Positions 5,746-62,384 of a DNA stretch of 64,000 nucleotides are shown in pieces (position 1 is the stretch's first letter; each line of letters begins with the position of its first letter). Position numbers and translations under genes: made by a program. Under the pieces are notes generated by a model. The model worked only from the letters and a program-made list of their open reading frames with translations. It did no database searches and was not told the origin of the DNA. This stretch comes from Podarcis cretensis (lineage: Eukaryota): the NCBI GenBank assembly GCA_951804945.1, contig OX638155.1, positions 71,176,001-71,240,000 on the forward strand. Direction: 5' to 3'.

Positions 5746-5827
5746 GTAAGTGGTCCTCCCAGGTTGTTTTTCTGCCGAACAGCAATTGTAAGGCAACCTA
5801 CAATGGTCTGCTGGTCTCCCGATGCAG

Positions 5828-5921
5828 GTTTATGGTCCGCGACTTTCAGTATAATGAAGAAGAGATGAAGGCAGACAAGGAAGAAATGAACAGGCTGTCT
5901 ACTGATAAGAAGAAACAGTTT
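5828..5921 (+). CDS. ATP6V1C1: ATP6V1C1 coding exon (follows an 82-nt intron)
   Basis: CAG|G...TTT|GTAAGT; [31 protein letters not shown]. Confidence 0.96.
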
Positions 5922-6682
5922 GTAAGTTCAATGTGTGTTAAATACATTTGAAGATAATTCTTCAACCCCCCAAATAGTTCTTCCTTCCCTACATCTGCCT
6001 TCAGGGACTATTGAGACTAATTCATTGATATATAAGAAACGTTGCAGTAAATGCAGAGCGAGCAAAGCAGCCTTTGACAGTATGAAAGCTGTTATAGTAT
6101 TTGTAGGTTACAGTTTGGGCTACGCTTTTCAGTGTTTGGCTATTTAGTTTTCTAGATGGCATTGGGAGATGTCAGGGCCCTAGAACCATCTGCAAAGGCT
6201 GTGAGACAAATCAGCCCCCACCCAGTGCCCGTTACCTCCACAGAAGGAGAATTTGTTGTGTGGGTCCCTTCCTACATGTAAGCTCTCAGATGTTTCTGTG
6301 CAGTGCCCAGTGTATTGAGGATTGCTACCATTTCTGTGGTTCTGAATGCATTGCATAGATCTCCTGCTGGAGGTGCCCTATGTAATTTCTGAAAGACAAA
6401 GATCCATGCCAGTAGATAAGCTTGTTCCTTTTTCTTTCTGTCTACATTTTCCTGAATAATTTCATGACTTTTTAAAAGCTGATTCCCTCCATATGAACCT
6501 GCCTATCCAGTAAGATCATCTTTGGAAGCTCCCCAGATCTGCCCTAGAGGTTCCCCCAATCCTCCAGAGCTGGTTTTGAGAGGGGGGTGCTGATGAGGAC
6601 AGAAGAGGAAGCACCACTGAGTCCATGGAAATGCATTGTGCCGGTGCAACTGCAGCCTTGGATACTGTCCTATGCAGTAAAA

Positions 6683-20054: not shown

Positions 20055-20542
20055 ACTACTACTACTACTACTACTACTACTAATAATAATAATAATAATA
20101 ATTTATTTATATCCCGCCCTCCCCAGCCAAAGCCAGGCTCAGAGTGGCTAACAATAGTAAAAATAGCACAGTTTATGTAAAATCAGTGTCAATTAATTGA
20201 AATACATTCTAAAATCAGTTCAAAATCAAATTAATGGCAACCATTGGGCTAGAGTTCTGTGAAGATTACCAAAGGGTCAGACTGTGCCTTGGCCAAAGGC
20301 CTGGTGGAACAGCTTTGTCTTGCAGGTCCTGCGAAAAGATGTCAAGTCCCACAGGGCCTAGTCTCTTGTGACAGAGCATTCCACCAGATCGGGGCCACGG
20401 CCAAAAAAGCCCTGGCTCTGGTTGAGGCCAGCCTAACCTCCCTGTGGCCCAGGATCTCCAAGACATTTTTATTTGAAGACCATAAGGTCCTCCGTGTGGC
20501 ATACTAGGAGAGGCGGTCCCGTAGGTACAAGGGTCCTAGGCT
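20055..20542 (-). mobile_element. L2-type LINE 3' fragment with (TAT)n(AGT)n microsatellite tail
   Basis: Compound (ACT)n(AAT)n run followed by L2-like 3' end (TTTATATCCCGCCC...) and reverse-strand ORF remnant. Confidence 0.65.
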
Positions 20543-21567
20543 AGCTTCCCAGAACACGGCTACTCTTGACTCACTGCTACCTCCTTACCATTTCTTCATT
20601 TATTTTATCCTCCCTCTCCCTTCTAGGGCAAGCCTTCAATAATCTACCTTGTAACTCTCAATAAAGCTTATTTTTTTCCTGGAAAATTTTCCAGTGTAAT
20701 CTCTGTTATTCCCTCCTGGTTACTTTGTGATGGGATTCTGTACCCAAACATAGTTCATAAATTTATGCTATGTTCCTGTATAGTTTGAGATATATTAGTT
20801 TCTGGAACAGCTCTACGCAGCAACAGCCTGTCCTCAAGCAAAATACATCCAAGGCTATCAGAGGGAAAATATTCTGCTGGTACTAGTAACTTGTATTCTA
20901 AAAGGGTTTAGTCCAAGAACATTGAAAAGAACTTTCAGACGTGTGCCCTGACCAAGCATGGTAATACACTGAAATCATTTTTTTACGTTTTAACTGATTG
21001 CTACACGATTAAGTAAGCCCCATCAGTTAATTGTTCAGGCTCTCAGTCTTATCCAGCAAGCTTGCCCTTCCCTCTCCAAATACATCAGGGCGCTGCAGTT
21101 TCACAGGCATACCTCAGCCTCCTTCTCTGCTGATTAAGTGTAGATATTATTTGGAGAGGTGCTTTAAATTGCTTGCAAAGGCCTCCACTAATTAACCAAT
21201 TAAAGACTGAATCCCTAATAAACAGGCACCAGAGCACCAATTGTTACGCACATATTATACAATGCAAATGAATTTTAGTGAACTGAAGGGCTCTCATGTA
21301 AAGGCCATTCTTCTTGAACCAGTTATCTAGGTCTTCTATTTTAGAGCTGTATTCCTCATATTTAAAGACTGTGCTTACACAATCAAGATACTGGACACCT
21401 ATAGTGGACCTACACTGGGGGGGGGGGGTCCCTGAAGTTTGAACTGTTATATGAACTGTTCACAACCAGCAACGAGGTCTGGGAAACCACTGTTATCTTC
21501 TTCAACTGGGCTGTTCCACAACAGATCACCACAAATTGTGTTTTTGGGTATCTGCTTAAGTACTTTT

Positions 21568-22060
21568 TGTCATAATTCAGGGCCGGTCAGAGGTATGTGC
21601 CTATCTCTCCAGGCACCGGCTGAATTCCTTTGACCTCCCTCCGGCGACTCCCGAAGGAAAAACACACGAGGTCCGTTCCGGCGATTTTCCTCAGGCTGTG
21701 AGAAAAACACACCAAACTGCTTCTCCTCCTCCCTGCTCTCCAGCATATCCCCAGGGAGGGGAATCAGACACAGACAGAAATGTATCTACATGTTTTATTC
21801 CTGTCTTCAGCAGTCATATAGAGAAAACATGTCTGCTCTCATCAACAAACAGAGAGAAACTCCAAACTCCACCCATGTACATCCTGTACAGGTCATATGA
21901 CACACACACTGAGCTAACATCCGGTGCTCAGTACAGAATGGACTGCCCCTTTGTTTCCATGGCAACAGTCACACACATCCTGTTTGGCTTTGCAGCCACA
22001 AGCAGCAGACTTGGCTGCTATAGCCTTTGCTTGCTGCTGCATTGCTGCTTTAGAATAACA
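21568..22060 (-). repeat. 3' LTR of the copia element
   Basis: Direct repeat of 25105-25597; one mismatch seen (21693 A vs 25230 C); minus-strand AATAAA at 21794-21799. Confidence 0.95.
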
Positions 22061-24613
22061 TACTCCCCCTAAAGTATCAATGCGTGCTGCGAGCAAAGCG
22101 TCATCCAGAGAAGAAAACAAACAGTTGTTATATGTATAACACTCCCCTGTTGTTTCAGTTCCACCCTTGGAACTACCCGCCACTGGTTTTACCAATGTAC
22201 CTCTCTGGTTGTGTGACTTCCAAGGAATGAGTGCTTCTGCATTACCTTGGTTAGCAACTCTCTGTTGTGCCTTTGTCTCTGACTCAGACACAGCTTCAAT
22301 TTGACCTTGGTCATTTACAACAGCAACACATGCAATAGCTTGGTTGGCAAACTCTTTTGAATACCTCGTGGGTGGTACACCCTTCGTTGCTCTCTCAGAC
22401 CTACGTAAGAGGTGCTGCTCTCCCTTGCTTTCTGGTTCAGCCTCTGAACTCTCTGGAGAACCAGTACTAAGCTTAATCAGTGGTTCATCCTCCTCTTCTG
22501 AGGGTCTAGTCATTGTGTGAGATGTCCTCTCAATGACTGTGACAACTGAGCTGTCTGAGCTATCGCTGTCATCATCAGTACTACTGAACTCAATAAGATC
22601 AAACTCATCATCATCATCATCAGAATCATCATCATCACCTGTGGGAAATGTGTGAACAATCACTCTCTCCTGTTCAGGAGCACTCTCTAGAAATTTTGTG
22701 AGAATCACCTTACCAGATTCAGACAAAATTACTCTGTAGAGACCCTTTTCATAACCCACAAAAATGCCTCTGGCATTCTTTACTCCACCTGGAGCTTCTG
22801 TCCTCACATGAGACCCAAAAACCTTGAAATGGGCAACAGAAGGTTTTCTGTGGAACAGTTTCTCAAAAGGAGAACTTCCCAACTCTTTTGAAACCTTTCT
22901 TAACCACGTGTAACAATATGACATTAGCGACTCAGCCCAGTACTCATGTGGCAGATGTGAACTAAGCAATTGCGCATGCATTCCCTTTTGCAATTCTTTG
23001 TTCACCCTAACACAAACACATCTGTTCCAAGCTTCTTCGGAAGCTGCAATTTTGTGTCTAATCCCTTTCTTCTTCAGGAACCTCTGGAAATCCTGTAAGA
23101 GAAAAATTGGCTTCTCATCTGTGCAAAGACAATCTATGTCAGCATCATGCATATTTTTAACCTTGTCACAAAACTCTTTAAACCTTTCTAAGGCTTCTTT
23201 CGGTCTCTCCAAAAGATAAATCCAGACAAAACCTGTAAAAGAATCAACACATATTAGGTAATACTTTGCATTGCCTCTAGATGGTGCTAAAGGACCAATC
23301 ACATCAGCATACACCCGCTGAAACGCCTTGTCGACCCTCGAGGTGACCTGCTTGGTGTTCTTCTTGGCTACACCTGCAAAAGAAATCATGTTAGTATCAC
23401 AAGAATTACATTCCATGTAATCACTTTGATCAAAAGTCAACAAATACAGTCCATCTTTCTCTTCGGCAGAAAGATACAACTCTCCATCTTTGTAGATCTC
23501 GCAGTGTTGATCATCATAGGACAGTTTTAGTCCCTTCTTGGCAATCTGCGAAACGCTGAGCAGATTGTACTTCAACTCTGGAACCAAATAAACATTATTT
23601 ATAGTCAAGTTCAGACTTTTAAGATACACAATCCCAATTCCGGTGGCTTCCAGCTCTTGACCGTTGGCTTGTTGTACAACGAAGCTTTGCTTCTTAAACG
23701 ACGAAAACAAATCCCTGCGATGGGTCATGTGAACCGTCGCTCCCGTGTCTAAAATGAAGGAATTCCCCACTTGTGGTGTGGCTTTTAGGGACATCAAAGC
23801 CTTTGCAGGCTTCGCCTGTGACTTGGCATGACTTCTGCCTGACGCCTCAGACTTCGTGGAGCTTCCCTTGGCTCCTTTGTTCTGACGTGGCTTCCTGCAG
23901 TACCGCTGAGGATGCCCAGTCTGTGCACAATTGAAGCATCGGACAACGTTCAAAGCTACAGCATTTTCTCCAGTAGCTACAGCAGTGGGGGTGTCTGAAC
24001 TCCGTTCTTCCCTCCCCCTGTCCTTGACTTCCAGGGCGGCAAGTCTGTCATGTTCGTTCAGGACCACGGCAAAGACTCTGTCCGAAGTCAAGTCTTGCGC
24101 TGGGAGAGACCCCAGCTGACTGGCAACCGTTTTGTAAGTCCGATTCAGGCTGTTGATCACCATGAAGCAAAACACTTCCTCCTGCAGACGGAAATTGCGT
24201 TCCACCATCTGCTGACGCAGAAATTTCATTTCCGTCAGGTGCGCTTGAACATCTCCATCAGGCGCAAGCCTCAGGTTAGTCAGCTTTTCAAAATACAGCA
24301 ACGCTGAAGAACCTGCATCTCTCTGATGTGTCCTTCTCAGTGTGTCCCAAACATCTTTCGCGTGCTCTAAATCTTGTATATGAACAAGCTGAGAGTCTGA
24401 CACGCACAGAATTATAGCAGTTCTGGCCTTCACATCCTGTGACTCCCAAGCACGCGTTGGTGCTGCAGGGATGGGGTTCTCAATCACCCCAAACAGTCTC
24501 TGATTCTGCAGCAAGGCCTTCATCTTAATAGACCAAGATGCATAATTGTCACTGGTCAAGAGGGGTGGAGAAGGCAGACTTCCCTTCTTGACATCCATTT
24601 TGAGTCCTTGCAT
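21914..24613 (-). CDS. Copia Gag-protease-degenerate integrase polyprotein, 899 aa
   Basis: Gag N-term LTSDNYASWSIKMKALL; CCHC knuckle CFNCAQTGHPQRYC (23897-23938); protease FILDTGATVHM; integrase core VYADVIGP...CTD; GIFVGY SH3-like region; LRRSER motif; no YVDD/RT or RNase H motifs. Confidence 0.93.
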   Translation of the reverse strand: MQGLKMDVKKGSLPSPPLLTSDNYASWSIKMKALLQNQRLFGVIENPIPAAPTRAWESQDVKARTAIILCVSDSQLVHIQDLEHAKDVWDTLRRTHQRDAGSSALLYFEKLTNLRLAPDGDVQAHLTEMKFLRQQMVERNFRLQEEVFCFMVINSLNRTYKTVASQLGSLPAQDLTSDRVFAVVLNEHDRLAALEVKDRGREERSSDTPTAVATGENAVALNVVRCFNCAQTGHPQRYCRKPRQNKGAKGSSTKSEASGRSHAKSQAKPAKALMSLKATPQVGNSFILDTGATVHMTHRRDLFSSFKKQSFVVQQANGQELEATGIGIVYLKSLNLTINNVYLVPELKYNLLSVSQIAKKGLKLSYDDQHCEIYKDGELYLSAEEKDGLYLLTFDQSDYMECNSCDTNMISFAGVAKKNTKQVTSRVDKAFQRVYADVIGPLAPSRGNAKYYLICVDSFTGFVWIYLLERPKEALERFKEFCDKVKNMHDADIDCLCTDEKPIFLLQDFQRFLKKKGIRHKIAASEEAWNRCVCVRVNKELQKGMHAQLLSSHLPHEYWAESLMSYCYTWLRKVSKELGSSPFEKLFHRKPSVAHFKVFGSHVRTEAPGGVKNARGIFVGYEKGLYRVILSESGKVILTKFLESAPEQERVIVHTFPTGDDDDSDDDDDEFDLIEFSSTDDDSDSSDSSVVTVIERTSHTMTRPSEEEDEPLIKLSTGSPESSEAEPESKGEQHLLRRSERATKGVPPTRYSKEFANQAIACVAVVNDQGQIEAVSESETKAQQRVANQGNAEALIPWKSHNQRGTLVKPVAGSSKGGTETTGECYTYNNCLFSSLDDALLAARIDTLGGVCYSKAAMQQQAKAIAAKSAACGCKAKQDVCDCCHGNKGAVHSVLSTGC
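22061..22070 (-). other. Polypurine tract (PPT)
   Basis: Minus strand AGGGGGAGTA directly abuts TG of the 3' LTR. Confidence 0.9.
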
Positions 24614-25072
24614 TGACTCTCAAACACAAGCCTCTAAAATCCAATAGCTGGCTTGTTTACACTCTGTGCACCTGGCAGCTCTAACACTGGCTGCTTGGAA
24701 AGTCCCTTTCCAACAGTTCCTTTGCAAGGGCCTAGACTAAACATGAGCTGTTTGTGCCTCTTTGGGCATAGCCTGACTTCCAGCCCTTATCTGCGTTGCT
24801 AAGCAACCACATTCCTTTCCTTGGACAGGAAAAACCACAGGAATGTTTGGAATGCAGACTCTTCTCTCTCGGAGCTGTTTTTCCCAAACGTTGCTCCCAT
24901 GAAGCAGAGAATGAATCAATCTGCATTCACACTCTTAAGCCCGAAAATCTCATACCTGGGCTCCGTAGCTTGGCTTTCAGCTTCTTCTGGTCAGCTTCTG
25001 GCTGCAGAGAATCAGCCTCCATCTCAGGCTTGCATGGAGAGGGATGAATACAGTCTCCTTGATGCAGACTCC

Positions 25073-25103
25073 CATGGATCGTAGCAACCGTCAGCTGCTA
25101 CCA
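25073..25103 (-). other. Primer-binding site for initiator tRNA-Met
   Basis: Minus strand TGGTAGCAG starts 1 nt after the 5' LTR, complementary to the recalled vertebrate tRNA-iMet 3' end; further match to CGATCCAT. Confidence 0.85.
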
Positions 25104-25104
25104 A

Positions 25105-25597
25105 TGTCATAATTCAGGGCCGGTCAGAGGTATGTGCCTATCTCTCCAGGCACCGGCTGAATTCCTTTGACCTCCCTCCGGCGACTCCCGAAGGAAAAAC
25201 ACACGAGGTCCGTTCCGGCGATTTTCCTCCGGCTGTGAGAAAAACACACCAAACTGCTTCTCCTCCTCCCTGCTCTCCAGCATATCCCCAGGGAGGGGAA
25301 TCAGACACAGACAGAAATGTATCTACATGTTTTATTCCTGTCTTCAGCAGTCATATAGAGAAAACATGTCTGCTCTCATCAACAAACAGAGAGAAACTCC
25401 AAACTCCACCCATGTACATCCTGTACAGGTCATATGACACACACACTGAGCTAACATCCGGTGCTCAGTACAGAATGGACTGCCCCTTTGTTTCCATGGC
25501 AACAGTCACACACATCCTGTTTGGCTTTGCAGCCACAAGCAGCAGACTTGGCTGCTATAGCCTTTGCTTGCTGCTGCATTGCTGCTTTAGAATAACA
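25105..25597 (-). repeat. 5' LTR of the copia element
   Basis: 493 bp, TG...CA, near-identical to 21568-22060. Confidence 0.95.
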
Positions 25598-25829
25598 CTT
25601 TTGTGAACTCATCGTTATTCCTAGGGTCTAGATCTCTGTTAAAAATTGGGGGAAATACATCAGCCACAACAGAGCAGTCAGTTTACCGCAACAATACCAC
25701 CTTTACATCTGTGCTACTGACTCTCAGTTTTTTAAAGCAATGTGGATGAAAGTCTCTGGGAACAGGGGCTCTGAAGATTGTATCATTCATTTCATAGTAG
25801 ATCCACCTCTGTCTGTGCTTCACAACTGC

Positions 25830-26340: not shown

Positions 26341-26949
26341 AAACTAATCATCATCATCATCATCATCATCGTCGTCATAATAATAACAACTGCTTATGGC
26401 CATCTAAAGCATTCGCCACCATCCAGCGCTCAATGAATTCCAGTCCCTTTAGGGTTTGAATTCACTGCAGAGAGGGTTGGCAATTAGCCAAAATCTTGTG
26501 TACTTACAGAATCGTTCCTTTTACATTGCAATGGATTAGCACTAACTAATGTATTTAATTAACCAATTCAGTATTAATTAGACAAGGAGACTTCCCTGGG
26601 TCTGGGAGGAGAATGTGTTCCAGCCTTAGCACCAAACTGTTCAGTATCATGCCTCTACTTTCAACCGACGTGCCGAAGAGATGTCTTGTTAGAGGAAAAA
26701 GAGGAAAAACAGCCAGTCCCGCTTCTGTATTAATATTAAAGGCAGTATCAGTTCAGGCTCTTTGCACAGCCTTCAGCCCACAGCCTGGCGAGGAGGATTC
26801 TAAATTCCCAGGAAATTTGAGGAGAAGAAAGGGATGGGAACAGAGAAGGGGGAAGAAGAAGAAGAAAAACCCTGAAGGGAAAGGAAAGAAGAGGACACGT
26901 AATTCTTATGGAAGAAGGCAACAGGAGGAGAAGAGGCAAGGGAACGTGA

Positions 26950-27520
26950 GGAAGGAGAGAGCAGAAGCTCCGGCCAGGACTGACAGGGGGCCGCCCTGAG
27001 GAGGCGGGCGAAACGGAGGAGGCGGGAAGCGATGGCGCCGCCTCCCGCCGCTCTCCCGCGCCTGGCCGGAGGCTGGGCGAGGAAGGTGGGAGGGCGATGC
27101 TGCTCTGGCCGGGCCGCTGACCGCGGTGCTGGCGCGGAGGGGGACGGAGGAGGAGGAGGAGGAGGAGGAGGCCCCGCAGGATGGGCTGCGGCGGGAGCCG
27201 AGCCGATGCCATCGAGCCGCGCTACTACGAGAGCTGGACGAGGGAGACCGAGTCCACCTGGCTGACCAACACAGACGCCGAGCCCCAGCAGCCGCTTCCC
27301 GCCGCCGCCGCCGCCGGCCCGGAGGGCGGCCACGCCGAGCCTGGCCCGAGGGAACCCGGTGAGTAGAGCTTGGGGCTGTGGTGGCGGGAAACGCGAGCCA
27401 GGCGGCCCGGGCCCTTCCCGCCTCCTCGCTCTCTCCTCCGCCTCGCTTCCTTCTGGGCTCTTCTCCACAGGCAAAGGTTTGGCCCGAGGAAGCCGAGAGG
27501 TGGGCCAGCGAACAGGTGGC
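26950..27520 (+). promoter_or_regulatory. CpG island / promoter and first exon of BAALC
   Basis: Abrupt GC- and CpG-rich block, GC-box-like motifs, (GGA)8 run just before the ATG. Confidence 0.85.
27181..27358 (+). CDS. BAALC: BAALC coding exon 1
   Basis: MGCGGSRADAIEPRYYESWTRETESTWLT is the recognisable BAALC N-terminus (Gly2 myristoylation, Cys3 palmitoylation); donor G|GTGAGT. Confidence 0.96.
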
Positions 27521-27871
27521 GAACACCTCACCTCCCTGTTGGGACATATTTCAGAGAAGTGGCTTTGCATTTCAAGTTCTGTCGTCTGAGCTGCGCTCAT
27601 GGATTTATTCCTGCAGCCCTTGCTCCTCGTTCTGTGCGGTGGCTTGCAATGCAACCCTATTAGGTCCTGCATATTCAGAAGAGAAGTGAAGACGCAGTCA
27701 CGGGTGGGGTTCTTTTTGGACCATTACTGATCTTGCGACTTTTTATTTTTAAGCAGGGAGAAGGGTTAAAACTTTCCCTCCCTGCAATGTAAAGAGAATG
27801 CATGGCAATATGCAGCTCTGCTTAACTTACATCTTCATGTAACTTAACCTTATGCCAGTATCGTGATGCGT

Positions 27872-27903
<32 letters not shown>

Positions 27904-51157: not shown

Positions 51158-51346
51158 ATGCCTGGGAAGATGGGTATCTTTGTACTCCTGACTTTGAGCT
51201 TAATCTTAAACTTGACACATGGGCATAGCTTATTCACATGTGAACCCATTACTATCCCAAGATGTTCTGGAATGGCCTACAATATGACATTTTTTCCCAA
51301 TGTGATGGGGCACTATGATCAGCAAACTGCAGCTGCCAGAATGGGG
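51158..51346 (+). CDS. FZD6: Frizzled-6 first coding exon (exon begins 50970); signal peptide and start of the CRD
   Basis: ...[35 protein letters not shown]; donor GGG|GTGAGT; the in-frame ATG at 51170 has a better Kozak context and may be the real start. Confidence 0.93.
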
Positions 51347-51961
51347 GTGAGTTGTTCTTTCTCTACCGTACATGCTATAAATATTTTTTCTGTTATATGT
51401 ACAAATGTGATTCTGTCAGTAAAAAGAATTCTAGGTAAGACATGTTCAATATTACACATTATGAGGAAAAACCTAGTGTTCTGAAACAAGACTTGAAATA
51501 GTTACCAAATGCCTAAAAATCATAGAGAGATGCAGGTACAAACATAACAGTATGGGCATGTGACCAGATTTTAGGGTCTATTCTTACATGGTTTGAGCCT
51601 GAAAATTTACAAAAGAGCTCCTACATCCTGTCTGAATAAATGTATAGAAGATCTTCTGTGTTACCTTTTTAAATCTTCAAAGTGTTTAGTCATCTGAGCT
51701 TCCTGACTGTTTATAGCAGGCGACCTTGTGCTGTATCCCCTCAGGCTACTGGCATCTGCATGCAGTTGGCATAAAAATTCATTGCTGCCCATAAAGTTCT
51801 AAAATATGAAATGCATCTCTTCCACAGATCTGTGTATGCACAGAACTGTGTATAAAAGCATAGGTGTAGTAACTCCTCAAATAAGTTTTGTTCATTATGC
51901 TAAATGAAAGGAGTGTTAAGCTTCTCTGAAGTTTATTCTTGTCTCTAACATACTCCTTCAG

Positions 51962-61395: not shown

Positions 61396-61592
61396 GATTT
61401 CCTTCCTCTTCTGAATGTCCAGTGCTCACCAGATATTCATGCATTTCTTTGCAAAGCATTTGTGCCTGCCTGTTTGGATCAATCGCGTGTGATTCACCCA
61501 TGCCGAAGTCTCTGTGAAAGAGTGTACTCTGACTGTAAACAAGTGATAAACACTTTTGGAATTAATTGGAACGAGGAGCTTGAATGCAGCAG
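61396..61592 (+). CDS. FZD6: FZD6 coding exon (cysteine-rich domain)
   Basis: AAG|GAT...AG|GTACAG, 197 nt; DFLPLLNVQCSPDIHAFLCKAFVPAC...PCRSLCERVYSDCKQVINTFGINWNEELECSR. Confidence 0.95.
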
Positions 61593-62384
61593 GTACAGTG
61601 TTTTTAATTCTCTTTATTTCCAATGGATTTTACTCTGGCCTAAGACAAAGTCCTAGTCCATACATTCATGCAATAAACTTCTCTTTGTTTGTTACATATC
61701 AGCTTGTGTGCCTCCTCTACACAGATGATCTTCTGTATAAATGGGTGCTCTTGGTTGCAATCAATTTATGTGATGACACCCATCACCCCAAATGCATGCA
61801 GTTCTTCCATTCCCCTCCTTTTTTTGAGGCAGAACAGTTGTGAATTGTACTTCCCAGGATTATTTGTGATGAGAAGAGTGTGTCTGCTCTTTCGAGGGGA
61901 GAGGAGCACTGCCAGGTTTATGCATATGCTTGGACCAAGTGTATATCTGATGAAGTGAATAAGCAAATTTGCTTTGCATATATATTTCAACCTAGACTGT
62001 TCAACTTTTCCATTCTCTTCTGTACAAGCTCTTTAGTGCTTTGGATTCTTGCTCATCCATATAGGAAACAGAGATCATTACAGGACTAGTGTGCATGGTA
62101 GTTGGTAAACAGCAGTTGAGGTGAGGAAGACTCTGAAGAATTAGGAAAAACTCATACCTTGAGCCCCCATCTCCTCAAAGACGAAGCACTTTGGAAGGAG
62201 AACTTTATTGTTGCCTTTTCTTCTGCCATGGTCATAAAGCACATAATATGATATCTCCTATAAAGGACAACATGTTAATTTGGAGGCCACTTTATTTCAA
62301 AAGCATTTATAAATAGCTTTAATACTTTTTAAAAAATCTATGTGTTATACAACATATAAAGCAATGGAAGCAGTGGCCAGTCAT

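What the first reader, a model, noticed from the sequence alone, without database searches (positions are those of the whole stretch)
21568..25597. Young, RT-less copia retrotransposon with an intact Gag-PR-pseudo-integrase ORF in a lizard
Seen: all cis signals are intact (LTRs, PBS, PPT, 5-bp TSD) and one uninterrupted 899-codon ORF is present, yet nothing recognisable as reverse transcriptase or RNase H lies between the LRRSER motif and the PPT. The LTRs differ at only 1 of 493 bases. Known: copia order is Gag-PR-IN-RT-RH, and Gag-encoding non-autonomous LTR elements are described mainly from plants (e.g. TR-GAG). Inference: this is a recently mobile parasite family that builds or contributes to its own capsid and borrows RT and IN from an autonomous helper, a two-component retroelement system that I do not recall being described in an amniote. 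The strong protein-level divergence without any stop or frameshift argues for a long-lived lineage under selection rather than a one-off deletion.
Basis: partly seen in the sequence, partly recalled or inferred. Interest (0 to 1): 0.85.

Follow-up and report, generated by a model that had tools for sequence, protein, structure and literature searches.

The report
RT-less copia retrotransposon family in lizards
This is a very young, structurally complete copia-type jumping gene that has no reverse transcriptase and a catalytically dead integrase yet keeps an intact capsid-protease-integrase gene. It belongs to an old lineage of such "parasites of parasites" that also turns up in three lacertid lizard species.

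Summary
Window 21568-25597 holds a 4,030-bp LTR retrotransposon on the minus strand. It has two 493-bp LTRs that differ at 1 base, TG..CA ends, a 5-bp duplication (CTTTT), a PBS, a PPT and one 899-codon ORF. The ORF encodes copia Gag, a CCHC knuckle, protease and an integrase-like domain. No RT or RNase H is found in any frame.

The integrase lacks the HH half of its zinc finger, and its catalytic Glu is Val. It still models as a confident integrase core plus SH3 fold.

This is not a one-off deletion. Gene models from Podarcis lilfordi (78% identical) and Zootoca vivipara (40% identical, 869 aa) share the same RT-less junction and the same integrase lesions. They form a 100%-supported clade, sister to RT-bearing elements.

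A neutral simulation predicts about 37 stop codons at that divergence, so the frame has been kept by selection.

The best reading is a long-lived, protein-coding, non-autonomous copia lineage mobilised in trans.

Comparable coding non-autonomous LTR elements are known in plants, and non-coding two-component ERV pairs are known in mammals. I rate this a new variant of a known kind.

The parts
25598..25602 (.). Target-site duplication, copy next to the 5' LTR (CTTTT on the + strand)
   Evidence: alignment of the LTR flanks
25105..25597 (-). 5' LTR, 493 bp, TG...CA ends. A TATA-like TATATG sits at about 25357-25352 and AATAAA at 25336-25331 (read by eye, function inferred).
   Evidence: 99.8% identical to the 3' LTR
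25088..25103 (-). Primer-binding site. TGGTAGCAG (25103-25095) matches the complement of the 3' end of vertebrate initiator tRNA-Met as I recall it. The next 7 bases match only partly.
   Evidence: sequence; the tRNA sequence is from memory and was not tested with a tool
24614..25104 (-). 491-nt leader (5' UTR) between the 5' LTR and the ORF start
21914..24613 (-). Single 899-codon ORF: Gag, NC, PR, inactive IN, acidic linker, and a tail that runs into the 3' LTR
24005..24580 (-). Gag capsid domain (aa 12-203). Pfam Retrotran_gag_2 and DUF4219. Similar to the Drosophila Copia VLP protein. pLDDT above 90.
23897..23938 (-). Nucleocapsid CCHC zinc knuckle (aa 226-239), intact
23423..23773 (-). 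Aspartic protease (aa 281-397). The active-site D-T-G is at aa 289-291 (23749-23741) and is intact in all family members.
22676..23419 (-). Inactive integrase (aa 399-646). The HH half of the zinc finger is deleted. The first and second catalytic Asp are present. The catalytic Glu is replaced by Val (within aa 530-539, 23026-22997). The core and SH3 folds are retained.
22391..22675 (-). Acidic, low-confidence linker (aa 647-735, with an Asp run at 22636-22604), ending in the LRRSER motif (aa 736-741, 22408-22391) that precedes RT in autonomous copia
22061..22390 (-). Post-LRRSER tail (aa 742-851) in place of the roughly 500-aa RT/RNase H region. The pre-RT linker is still recognisable. There is a tentative RNase H remnant at 22162-22115. 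This is the most conserved segment between family members.
22063..22070 (-). Polypurine tract AGGGGGAG, two bases upstream of the 3' LTR. It lies inside the ORF (translated as ..LGGV..).
21568..22060 (-). 3' LTR, 493 bp. Its first 147 bases encode the last 48 codons and the stop of the ORF.
21563..21567 (.). Target-site duplication, copy next to the 3' LTR (CTTTT on the + strand)

Best explanation
The element is a recent insertion from a non-autonomous Ty1/copia lineage of lacertid lizards. The lineage has lost reverse transcriptase and RNase H and has a catalytically dead integrase. It still encodes, under purifying selection, its own Gag capsid protein, nucleocapsid knuckle, active-looking protease and a folded integrase-like domain.

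Proposed life cycle, with the basis for each step:

1. Transcription starts in the 5' LTR (inferred).
2. The single ORF is translated and cut by its own protease (inferred from intact motifs).
3. Its Gag helps to package its own RNA (inferred, by analogy with Gag-encoding non-autonomous plant elements).
4. Reverse transcription is primed at the tRNA-iMet-type PBS and at the PPT. Integration produces a 5-bp duplication. Both steps are carried out by RT/RNase H and integrase supplied in trans by an autonomous copia element of the same genome. Trans supply follows necessarily from the missing RT, but the helper was not identified.

What is shown here: intact cis signals, absence of RT/RH, the integrase lesions, the shared architecture and monophyly of relatives in three lizard species, and frames kept open across deep divergence.

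Why the dead integrase domain is retained is unknown. My guess is a non-catalytic role, such as contact with the helper's integrase or RT, or a role in particle maturation or nuclear entry.
For: Cis signals and youth:
- LTRs are 492/493 identical, with a TSD, PBS and PPT.

No RT/RH:
- Pfam finds none.
- tblastn with 7 RT-bearing proteins in six frames finds none.
- A 30-protein profile finds none.
- The internal region is only 3,044 bp, of which the ORF fills 2,553 bp.

Family evidence:
- P0001 (P. lilfordi) is 78% identical over aa 420-899, through the same junction and to the same stop inside the LTR. All five indels are in frame.
- P0014 (Z. vivipara, 869 aa) is 40% identical and collinear over aa 16-849, with a homologous junction..PWK..LV.PV..SS..Y.NCLF.SL.DAL.
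- P. lilfordi models lie on at least three different chromosomes.

Shared derived lesions:
- The HH deletion, and Glu to Val in all four members that cover the region. 26 of 26 autonomous-type rows keep HHCC and both Asp, and 25 keep Glu with 1 gap.
- These lesions rule out the idea that such copies are by-products of a working autonomous master.

Phylogeny:
- The RT-less clade has SH-aLRT 100 and is sister to RT-bearing P0002 and P0015.
- Most of its branch length (0.64 and 0.86 changes per site) accrued after the shared RT-less stem (0.45).

Selection:
- A neutral simulation expects about 37 stops at 43% identity, and 0 of 400 replicates kept both frames open.
- The protease Asp and the CCHC knuckle are conserved in every member whose model covers them.
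- Folded domains are more conserved (43-47%) than linkers (18-37%).

Integrase fold retained:
- pLDDT is above 90 for aa 424-646.
- Foldseek target TM-scores reach 0.81 against the PFV integrase core.
- Sequence match to Ty1 integrase 7z0h, E 2e-7.
Against: - No helper was found. The nearest RT-bearing relative (P0002, host unknown) is only 34% identical. No lacertid protein with a related RT turned up.
So there is no dN/dS, no copy count, no comparison of LTR, PBS or TSD between copies, and no test of an empty site.
- The relatives are known only as automatic gene models. Such models are biased toward open frames, and several are chimeric (annotated as V2R26-like or FAM168A).
- Expression and mobility have not been observed.
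- The PBS assignment rests on a 9-nt match to a tRNA sequence recalled from memory.
- The RT-less branch evolves about 1.6-1.9 times faster than its autonomous sister, so constraint is weaker than in autonomous elements.
Confidence: 0.8

Rival explanations
1. This is a one-off event: a normal autonomous copia copy lost RT/RNase H after insertion, or the assembly collapsed it.
For: Only one copy is present in the 64-kb window. Internal deletions of LTR elements are common (general knowledge).
Against: The same junction and the same integrase lesions occur in proteins from P. lilfordi and Z. vivipara that are only 78% and 40% identical. The deletion therefore predates this copy by a long way. 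The frame also runs cleanly through the junction.
Confidence: 0.02
2. The RT-less copies do not form a self-propagating lineage. Each is a dead-on-arrival by-product, for example reverse transcription of a spliced or internally deleted RNA of an autonomous master element. Their open frames would then reflect selection on the master.
For: Drosophila copia makes a spliced subgenomic RNA for Gag-PR (general knowledge, not tested). Splice-acceptor-like motifs occur in the ORF (read by eye).
Against: A working master needs an active integrase. Every RT-less member that covers the region has the catalytic Glu replaced by Val, and the zinc-finger HH half is deleted wherever the model covers it. The RT-less rows form their own clade with long internal branches. 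So the lesions and the RT loss are inherited within a separate lineage.
Confidence: 0.05
3. The ORF is a domesticated host gene or restriction-factor-like gene family (an exapted Gag-PR-IN) rather than a mobile parasite.
For: The ORF is conserved with a dead enzyme domain. One relative is annotated at a host gene locus (P0014, 'FAM168A isoform X1'). The window copy sits about 1.6 kb upstream of BAALC exon 1.
Against: The window copy has near-identical LTRs, a TSD, a PBS and a PPT, which are the marks of recent retrotransposition. Copies lie at different loci and chromosomes. Both this ORF and P0014 read on into LTR sequence. The host-gene names come from chimeric automatic models.
Confidence: 0.04
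4. The frame is open only because the family is young. There is no selection on the protein, and only the cis signals matter, as in LARD- or TRIM-type elements.
For: This copy is too young (1 LTR difference) to have decayed, so on its own it says nothing about selection.
Against: Members that are 40-78% identical are all open. Neutral drift to that level gives 14 to about 37 expected stops, with 0 of 400 replicates open. Catalytic and zinc motifs of PR and NC are kept, and folded domains are more conserved than linkers. The caveat is that the relatives come from gene models, which favour open frames.
Confidence: 0.05

Closest known systems
Plant Gag-encoding non-autonomous ('semi-autonomous') LTR retrotransposons: TR-GAG, wheat RLG_Sabrina, RLG_Quinta (partner RLG_Cereba), and sugar-beet GAG/PROT families
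   Same: They have intact LTR, PBS and PPT and no RT/RNase H. A Gag ORF is kept open. They persist for millions of years alongside an autonomous partner and are proposed to contribute Gag while borrowing enzymes (PMC11302176, PMC13570524).
   Different: Those are plant elements. TR-GAG and Quinta encode Gag only, or Gag plus an unknown domain. This one is an amniote copia that also keeps a protease and a folded but catalytically dead integrase, and its partner has not been identified.
Mammalian ERV autonomous/defective pairs: MusD/ETn, IAP/IAP I-delta-1, KoRV-A/RecKoRV, bovine ERVK[2-1-LTR] C/D types
   Same: These are two-component LTR systems in amniotes in which a shorter element is mobilised in trans and can out-replicate its helper (PMC10924933).
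   Different: They belong to a different superfamily (retroviruses). Apart from IAP I-delta-1, the defective partners lack functional genes, whereas here a long ORF is conserved across deep divergence.
Autonomous Ty1/copia elements of squamates (Anolis Copia families; the 5.8-kb copia insertion in corn-snake OCA2)
   Same: Same superfamily and host group. The Gag-PR-IN order and a recently active element in a squamate are shared (PMC4657000). Copia occurs in reptiles but not in birds or mammals (PMC4350176).
   Different: Those carry RT and RNase H and an integrase core domain. This element lacks RT/RH and its integrase is inactive. The nearest RT-bearing relative found is 34% identical.
BARE-2 / BARE-1 of barley
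   Same: A copia-superfamily pair in which one partner is defective in one protein and depends on the other. Named in PMC13570524 as an example of similar sequences shared between a non-autonomous and an autonomous LTR retrotransposon.
   Different: BARE-2 lacks functional Gag but keeps Pol ('life without GAG'). This is the opposite division of labour from the element here.

Membership tests
Ty1/copia (Pseudoviridae) LTR retrotransposon | Direct LTRs with TG...CA termini, flanked by a 5-bp target-site duplication | tested here: met
   493-bp LTRs, 492/493 identical, TSD CTTTT
Ty1/copia (Pseudoviridae) LTR retrotransposon | Copia-type Gag and a protease-then-integrase order (integrase upstream of the RT position) | tested here: met
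   PF14223 at 31-191, PF22936 at 286-361, rve and SH3_retrovirus at 430-639; collinear with a full copia polyprotein up to the RT boundary; match to the Copia VLP protein and Ty1 integrase.
Ty1/copia (Pseudoviridae) LTR retrotransposon | RVT_2 reverse transcriptase and RNase H | tested here: not met
   none in any frame. It is therefore a derivative of the superfamily, not an autonomous member.
Ty1/copia (Pseudoviridae) LTR retrotransposon | PBS complementary to initiator tRNA-Met, and a PPT next to the 3' LTR | tested here: inconclusive
   the PPT AGGGGGAG is clear. The PBS 9-mer TGGTAGCAG fits the tRNA-iMet 3' end only as recalled from memory. No tRNA gene in the window was available for comparison.
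Catalytically competent retroviral-type integrase | HHCC zinc finger and the D,D,E triad | tested here: not met
   HH is deleted, and Glu is replaced by Val in the window ORF, P0001, P0013 and P0014. The first Asp is also lost in P0014. All 26 autonomous-type rows keep the motifs, apart from one gap at the Glu column. The fold is retained.
Non-autonomous, protein-coding LTR retrotransposon family (TR-GAG / semi-autonomous type) | Intact cis signals, no RT/RH, and a Gag ORF kept open | tested here: met
Non-autonomous, protein-coding LTR retrotransposon family (TR-GAG / semi-autonomous type) | Several diverged copies share the same deleted structure (a family, not a single deletion) | tested here: met
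   P0001, P0013, P0003, P0018 and P0019 (Podarcis) and P0014 (Zootoca). This was tested at protein level only.
Non-autonomous, protein-coding LTR retrotransposon family (TR-GAG / semi-autonomous type) | An autonomous partner in the same genome shares LTR termini, PBS and PPT | not testable with these tools
The protein search for a related RT in lacertids found none.
TR-GAG in the strict sense | Encodes Gag only | tested here: not met
   the ORF also encodes a protease and an integrase-like domain
Domesticated Gag/integrase host gene | No LTRs or TSD, at a fixed orthologous single locus | tested here: not met
   LTRs and TSD are present, and copies lie on several chromosomes

The most novel reading that the evidence does not exclude
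Lacertid lizards harbour an ancient, obligately parasitic copia lineage. Its catalytically dead but well-folded integrase, together with its own Gag and protease, is conserved because the protein itself does the parasitising. One version is that it draws a helper's RT and integrase into its own capsids through integrase-integrase or integrase-RT contacts. Another is that it acts as a dominant-negative brake on the helper. Either would be a protein-level hyperparasite of a retrotransposon in an amniote, still active within roughly the last million years.
Probability: 0.25. Interest if true: 0.75.

Novelty: new variant of a known kind. Interest (0 to 1): 0.58.

Why it matters
Non-autonomous LTR elements that keep a selected coding capacity are well studied in plants but hardly at all in animals. 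In amniotes, the known two-component LTR systems involve endogenous retroviruses whose defective partners are mostly non-coding.

Here the defective partner has kept Gag, protease and an inactivated integrase open through divergence down to 40% identity. It has also inserted very recently, next to a host promoter region. This gives a tractable vertebrate case for three questions:

- Which retroelement proteins must act in cis?
- What can an integrase domain do without catalysis?
- How do parasite-of-parasite dynamics shape copia activity in squamates, the amniote group in which copia is known to have inserted recently (the corn-snake OCA2 insertion)?

There is also a practical point. The ORF contaminates reference annotations: it appears inside models named 'vomeronasal type-2 receptor 26-like' and 'FAM168A isoform X1'.

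Tried and rejected
I therefore had no DNA of any other copy, and no dN/dS, LTR/PBS comparison or copy count.

2. An exact 20-mer spanning the LTR end and PBS was searched in metagenome and viral contigs. It gave three hits with no other similarity to the element, which I take as chance matches, and no viral hits.

3. A search restricted to the C-terminal junction region (aa 640-899) found only P0001 again. Proteins shorter than 494 aa or longer than 1,573 aa were outside its reach.

4. A search for a lacertid RT related to the nearest autonomous relative found none. The closest named RT is a 57%-identical fragment in the anguid lizard Elgaria.

5. I tested the idea that the tail holds mapped RT/RNase H remnants. 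The profile search found nothing. Only a 23-aa RNase H-like stretch appears, at hhalign E 0.014 and probability 3%, so I treat it as tentative.

6. Host names for the wider clade could not be obtained, because most neighbours come from unnamed ENA or Logan contigs.

7. Rfam and tRNA scans of the window were empty.

The consensus lines that the alignment tools print were not used. The profile was made from 30 natural autonomous copia proteins and served only as a search probe.

Full report
**What is there**

Window 21568-25597 is a complete LTR retrotransposon on the minus strand.
- The two LTRs (21568-22060 and 25105-25597) are 493 bp each. They differ at one base (21693 A versus 25230 C) and begin with TG and end with CA.
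- They are flanked by the 5-bp direct repeat CTTTT.
- On the coding strand, the 5' LTR is followed after one base by TGGTAGCAG. As far as I recall the vertebrate initiator tRNA-Met sequence, this is the complement of its 3' end. That is memory, not a test.
- The 3' LTR is preceded by the polypurine tract AGGGGGAG.
- A 491-nt leader precedes one ORF of 899 codons, 24613..21914.
- The window contains no other copy or solo LTR.

**What the ORF encodes**

Pfam finds these domains:
- copia Gag (PF14223, aa 31-191, E 4e-24) and DUF4219;
- the Pol beta-barrel protease (PF22936, aa 286-361, E 8e-20);
- a sub-threshold integrase core (rve, aa 430-523, 22.5 bits against a 32.6-bit cutoff);
- the retroviral SH3-like domain (aa 587-639).

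PDB sequence matches are the Drosophila Copia VLP protein for Gag and Ty1 integrase for aa 429-563.

An AlphaFold2 model built on a 33-sequence alignment is confident (pLDDT mostly above 90) for Gag 12-203, protease 281-397 and integrase core plus SH3 424-646. It has low confidence for everything after aa 647. Foldseek places the integrase part on retroviral integrase cores, with target TM-scores up to 0.81.

**No reverse transcriptase**

- There is no RVT_2 or RNase H hit at E<=1.
- tblastn with seven RT-bearing copia polyproteins finds only the Gag-PR-IN frame of this ORF and no RT/RH anywhere in the window.
- A profile built from 30 natural autonomous copia polyproteins matches the ORF only up to profile position 786. 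The RT-less relatives P0001 and P0014 match up to about position 800. Both limits lie just before RT.
- There is no room either. The internal region is 3,044 bp, and the ORF fills 2,553 bp of it.

Against the nearest RT-bearing relative (P0002, 1,338 aa, 34% identity), the ORF is collinear from Gag through the LRRSER motif and the short pre-RT linker. It then lacks roughly 500 residues. A 16-23-aa piece (aa 818-833) resembles an RNase H segment, but only weakly (E 0.004 pairwise; hhalign E 0.014, probability 3%). I treat it as tentative.

The frame then reads through the PPT and 147 bases into the 3' LTR before it stops.

**The integrase is dead but folded**

In an alignment with 26 autonomous-type copia proteins, all 26 keep the zinc-finger H, H, C, C and both catalytic Asp. 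25 keep the catalytic Glu, and one row has a gap there.

The window ORF has the HH half of the zinc finger deleted (a 51-residue gap against P0002), and it has Val in place of the catalytic Glu.

The protease Asp and the nucleocapsid CCHC knuckle are intact.

**It is a family, and an old one**

The closest database proteins are automatic gene models from lacertid lizards.

| Protein | Species | Identity to window ORF | Region covered |
|---|---|---|---|
| P0001 | P. lilfordi | 78% | aa 420-899 |
| P0013 | P. lilfordi | 75-77% | aa 273-706 |
| P0018 / P0165 | P. lilfordi | 74% (BLASTP, aa 482-647); 84% (HMMER, aa 505-647) | part of the integrase and SH3 region |
| P0019 | P. lilfordi | 66% | aa 31-188 (Gag fragment) |
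| P0003 | P. muralis | 82% | aa 192-389 |
| P0014 | Zootoca vivipara (XP_060129920.1, 869 aa) | 40% | aa 16-849, collinear |

The P. lilfordi models lie on at least three chromosomes.

- P0001 runs through the same RT-less junction to the same stop inside the LTR, and all five of its indels are in frame.
- P0014 has a recognisably homologous junction and also reads through a PPT-like stretch.
- All members that cover the integrase share the Glu-to-Val change, and the HH deletion is seen wherever a model covers that region. P0014 has additionally lost the first Asp.

In maximum-likelihood trees the RT-less rows form a clade with SH-aLRT 100. That clade is sister to the RT-bearing pair P0002/P0015, and the next branch out is a P. 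lilfordi copia fragment with a normal integrase N-terminus.

On Gag-PR-IN columns only, the shared RT-less stem is 0.45 changes per site. The two sub-lineages then add 0.64 and 0.86. So most of the divergence happened after RT was lost. The RT-less lineage is about 1.6-1.9 times as far from the common node as the autonomous sisters.

**Selection**

A neutral substitution simulation on this ORF gives about 14 stop codons at 76% identity between two descendants, and about 37 at 43%. In 0 of 400 replicates did both frames stay open.

Conservation also tracks folding. For the window ORF against P0014:
- Gag 43%, protease 47%, integrase core 47%, SH3 46%;
- NC linker 33%, the zinc-finger remnant 18%, the acidic linker 37%.

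This is what purifying selection on a protein looks like.

Two caveats apply. I had no DNA of other copies, so no dN/dS was possible. And gene models are biased toward open frames.

One oddity remains. The 56 residues just upstream of the PPT (aa 796-851) are the most conserved part in both comparisons (96% and 51%), although the model gives them low confidence. That could reflect a cis-acting RNA or DNA function, or a short protein motif.

**How it most likely works**

Without RT and RNase H, and with an inactive integrase, the element cannot copy itself. Near-identical LTRs and a clean duplication nevertheless show a recent retrotransposition.
- With K = 1/493 and an assumed squamate rate of 1-2e-9 per site per year, the insertion is about 0.5-1 million years old. 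A single difference leaves a wide error. This is inference.
- RT/RNase H and integrase must therefore have come in trans from an autonomous copia element.
- The shared integrase lesions show that these copies are not by-products of a working master, because a master could not carry them. The RT-less form replicates as its own lineage.
- The conserved ORF implies that its own Gag, protease and integrase-like domain raise its chance of being copied. The most plausible route is packaging of its own RNA into particles that also contain helper enzymes. This last step is inference by analogy with Gag-encoding non-autonomous plant elements (PMC11302176, PMC13570524).

**What I could not do**

- An exact LTR/PBS 20-mer gave only chance hits in metagenome contigs.
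- No helper was identified. The nearest RT-bearing relative is of unknown host, and the closest named RT is a 57%-identical fragment from the anguid lizard Elgaria.

**Comparison with what is known**

- Copia elements occur in reptiles but not in birds or mammals (PMC4350176).
- An autonomous 5.8-kb copia caused the corn-snake amelanistic allele (PMC4657000).
- Coding non-autonomous LTR elements are established in plants: TR-GAG, Sabrina, Quinta/Cereba and GAG/PROT families.
- Two-component LTR systems are established in mammals for ERVs: ETn/MusD, IAP I-delta-1, RecKoRV and bovine ERVK C/D (PMC10924933). I found no report of that version, but the library is not exhaustive and Repbase was not available.

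I file this as a new variant of a known kind.

**Host and context**

All close relatives are from Lacertidae. The window carries three host exons, all on the + strand:
- a V-ATPase subunit C exon at about 5.8 kb;
- BAALC exon 1 at 27181;
- an Fz-domain exon at about 51.2 kb.

As I recall it, this matches the ATP6V1C1-BAALC-FZD6 arrangement of amniotes. The element lies antisense, about 1.6 kb upstream of the BAALC start codon, next to a CpG-rich stretch.

- The window has no N.
- Nothing looked human.

Noticed in passing
window 26600-27700; BAALC exon 1 starts at 27181 (+): There is a CpG-rich stretch (GC about 50%, CpG observed/expected 0.74 against 0.27 for the rest of the window). It contains an ORF starting MGCGGSRADAIEPRYYESW, the N-terminus of BAALC as I recall it. 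The retrotransposon sits antisense about 1.6 kb upstream, so it could affect this promoter.
   Followed up: partly
window about 5823-5924 (+) and about 51239-51355 (+): Two exon-sized Pfam hits: V-ATPase subunit C (E 1e-5) and an Fz domain (E 3e-6, below the curated cutoff). Together with BAALC they suggest the ATP6V1C1-BAALC-FZD6 neighbourhood known from amniotes (recalled, not tested).
   Followed up: partly
proteins P0015, P0162-P0164 (Logan assemblies, host unknown): Four near-identical 845-aa Gag-PR-IN proteins sit on contigs of only 3.1-3.8 kb. They are 67% identical to the autonomous P0002 and have a complete HHCC/DDE integrase, and the frame stops exactly where RT should begin. This may be a second, independent RT-less copia form, or just truncated assemblies.
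   Followed up: no
proteins P0001, P0003 (Podarcis), P0014 (Zootoca), P0018/P0165: Reference annotations contain chimeric or misnamed models built on this transposon's ORF: 'vomeronasal type-2 receptor 26-like', 'FAM168A isoform X1' and 'Pol polyprotein from transposon TNT 1-94'. P0014 is transposon ORF from residue 15 to at least 851, and the remaining residues to 869 look like PPT and LTR read-through rather than FAM168A.
   Followed up: partly
window about 23385-23375, 23245-23235 and 23105-23095 (minus strand): Three polypyrimidine-plus-AG motifs that look like splice acceptors lie in the degenerate N-terminal part of the integrase region. One is preceded by a TACTAAC branch-point-like sequence. 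They may be chance, and the ORF reads straight through them.
   Followed up: no
window 22061-22228 (aa 796-851 of the ORF): The stretch just upstream of the PPT is the most conserved part of the protein between family members (96% with P0001, 51% with P0014), even though it replaces RT/RNase H and is modelled with low confidence. This could be a cis-acting RNA or DNA signal rather than a protein constraint.
   Followed up: partly
window 61507-61780 (+): There are very weak tblastn matches to integrase and RT segments of P0002 (E 0.45-3.5). They are not significant. At most they are a very old retroelement remnant.
   Followed up: no
window 20055-20082, 26347-26378, 27136-27171, 27873-27901: Short microsatellites flank the element and lie in the CpG-rich region: (ACT)9, (ATC)11, (GGA)12 and (TTTTG)6.
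   Followed up: no
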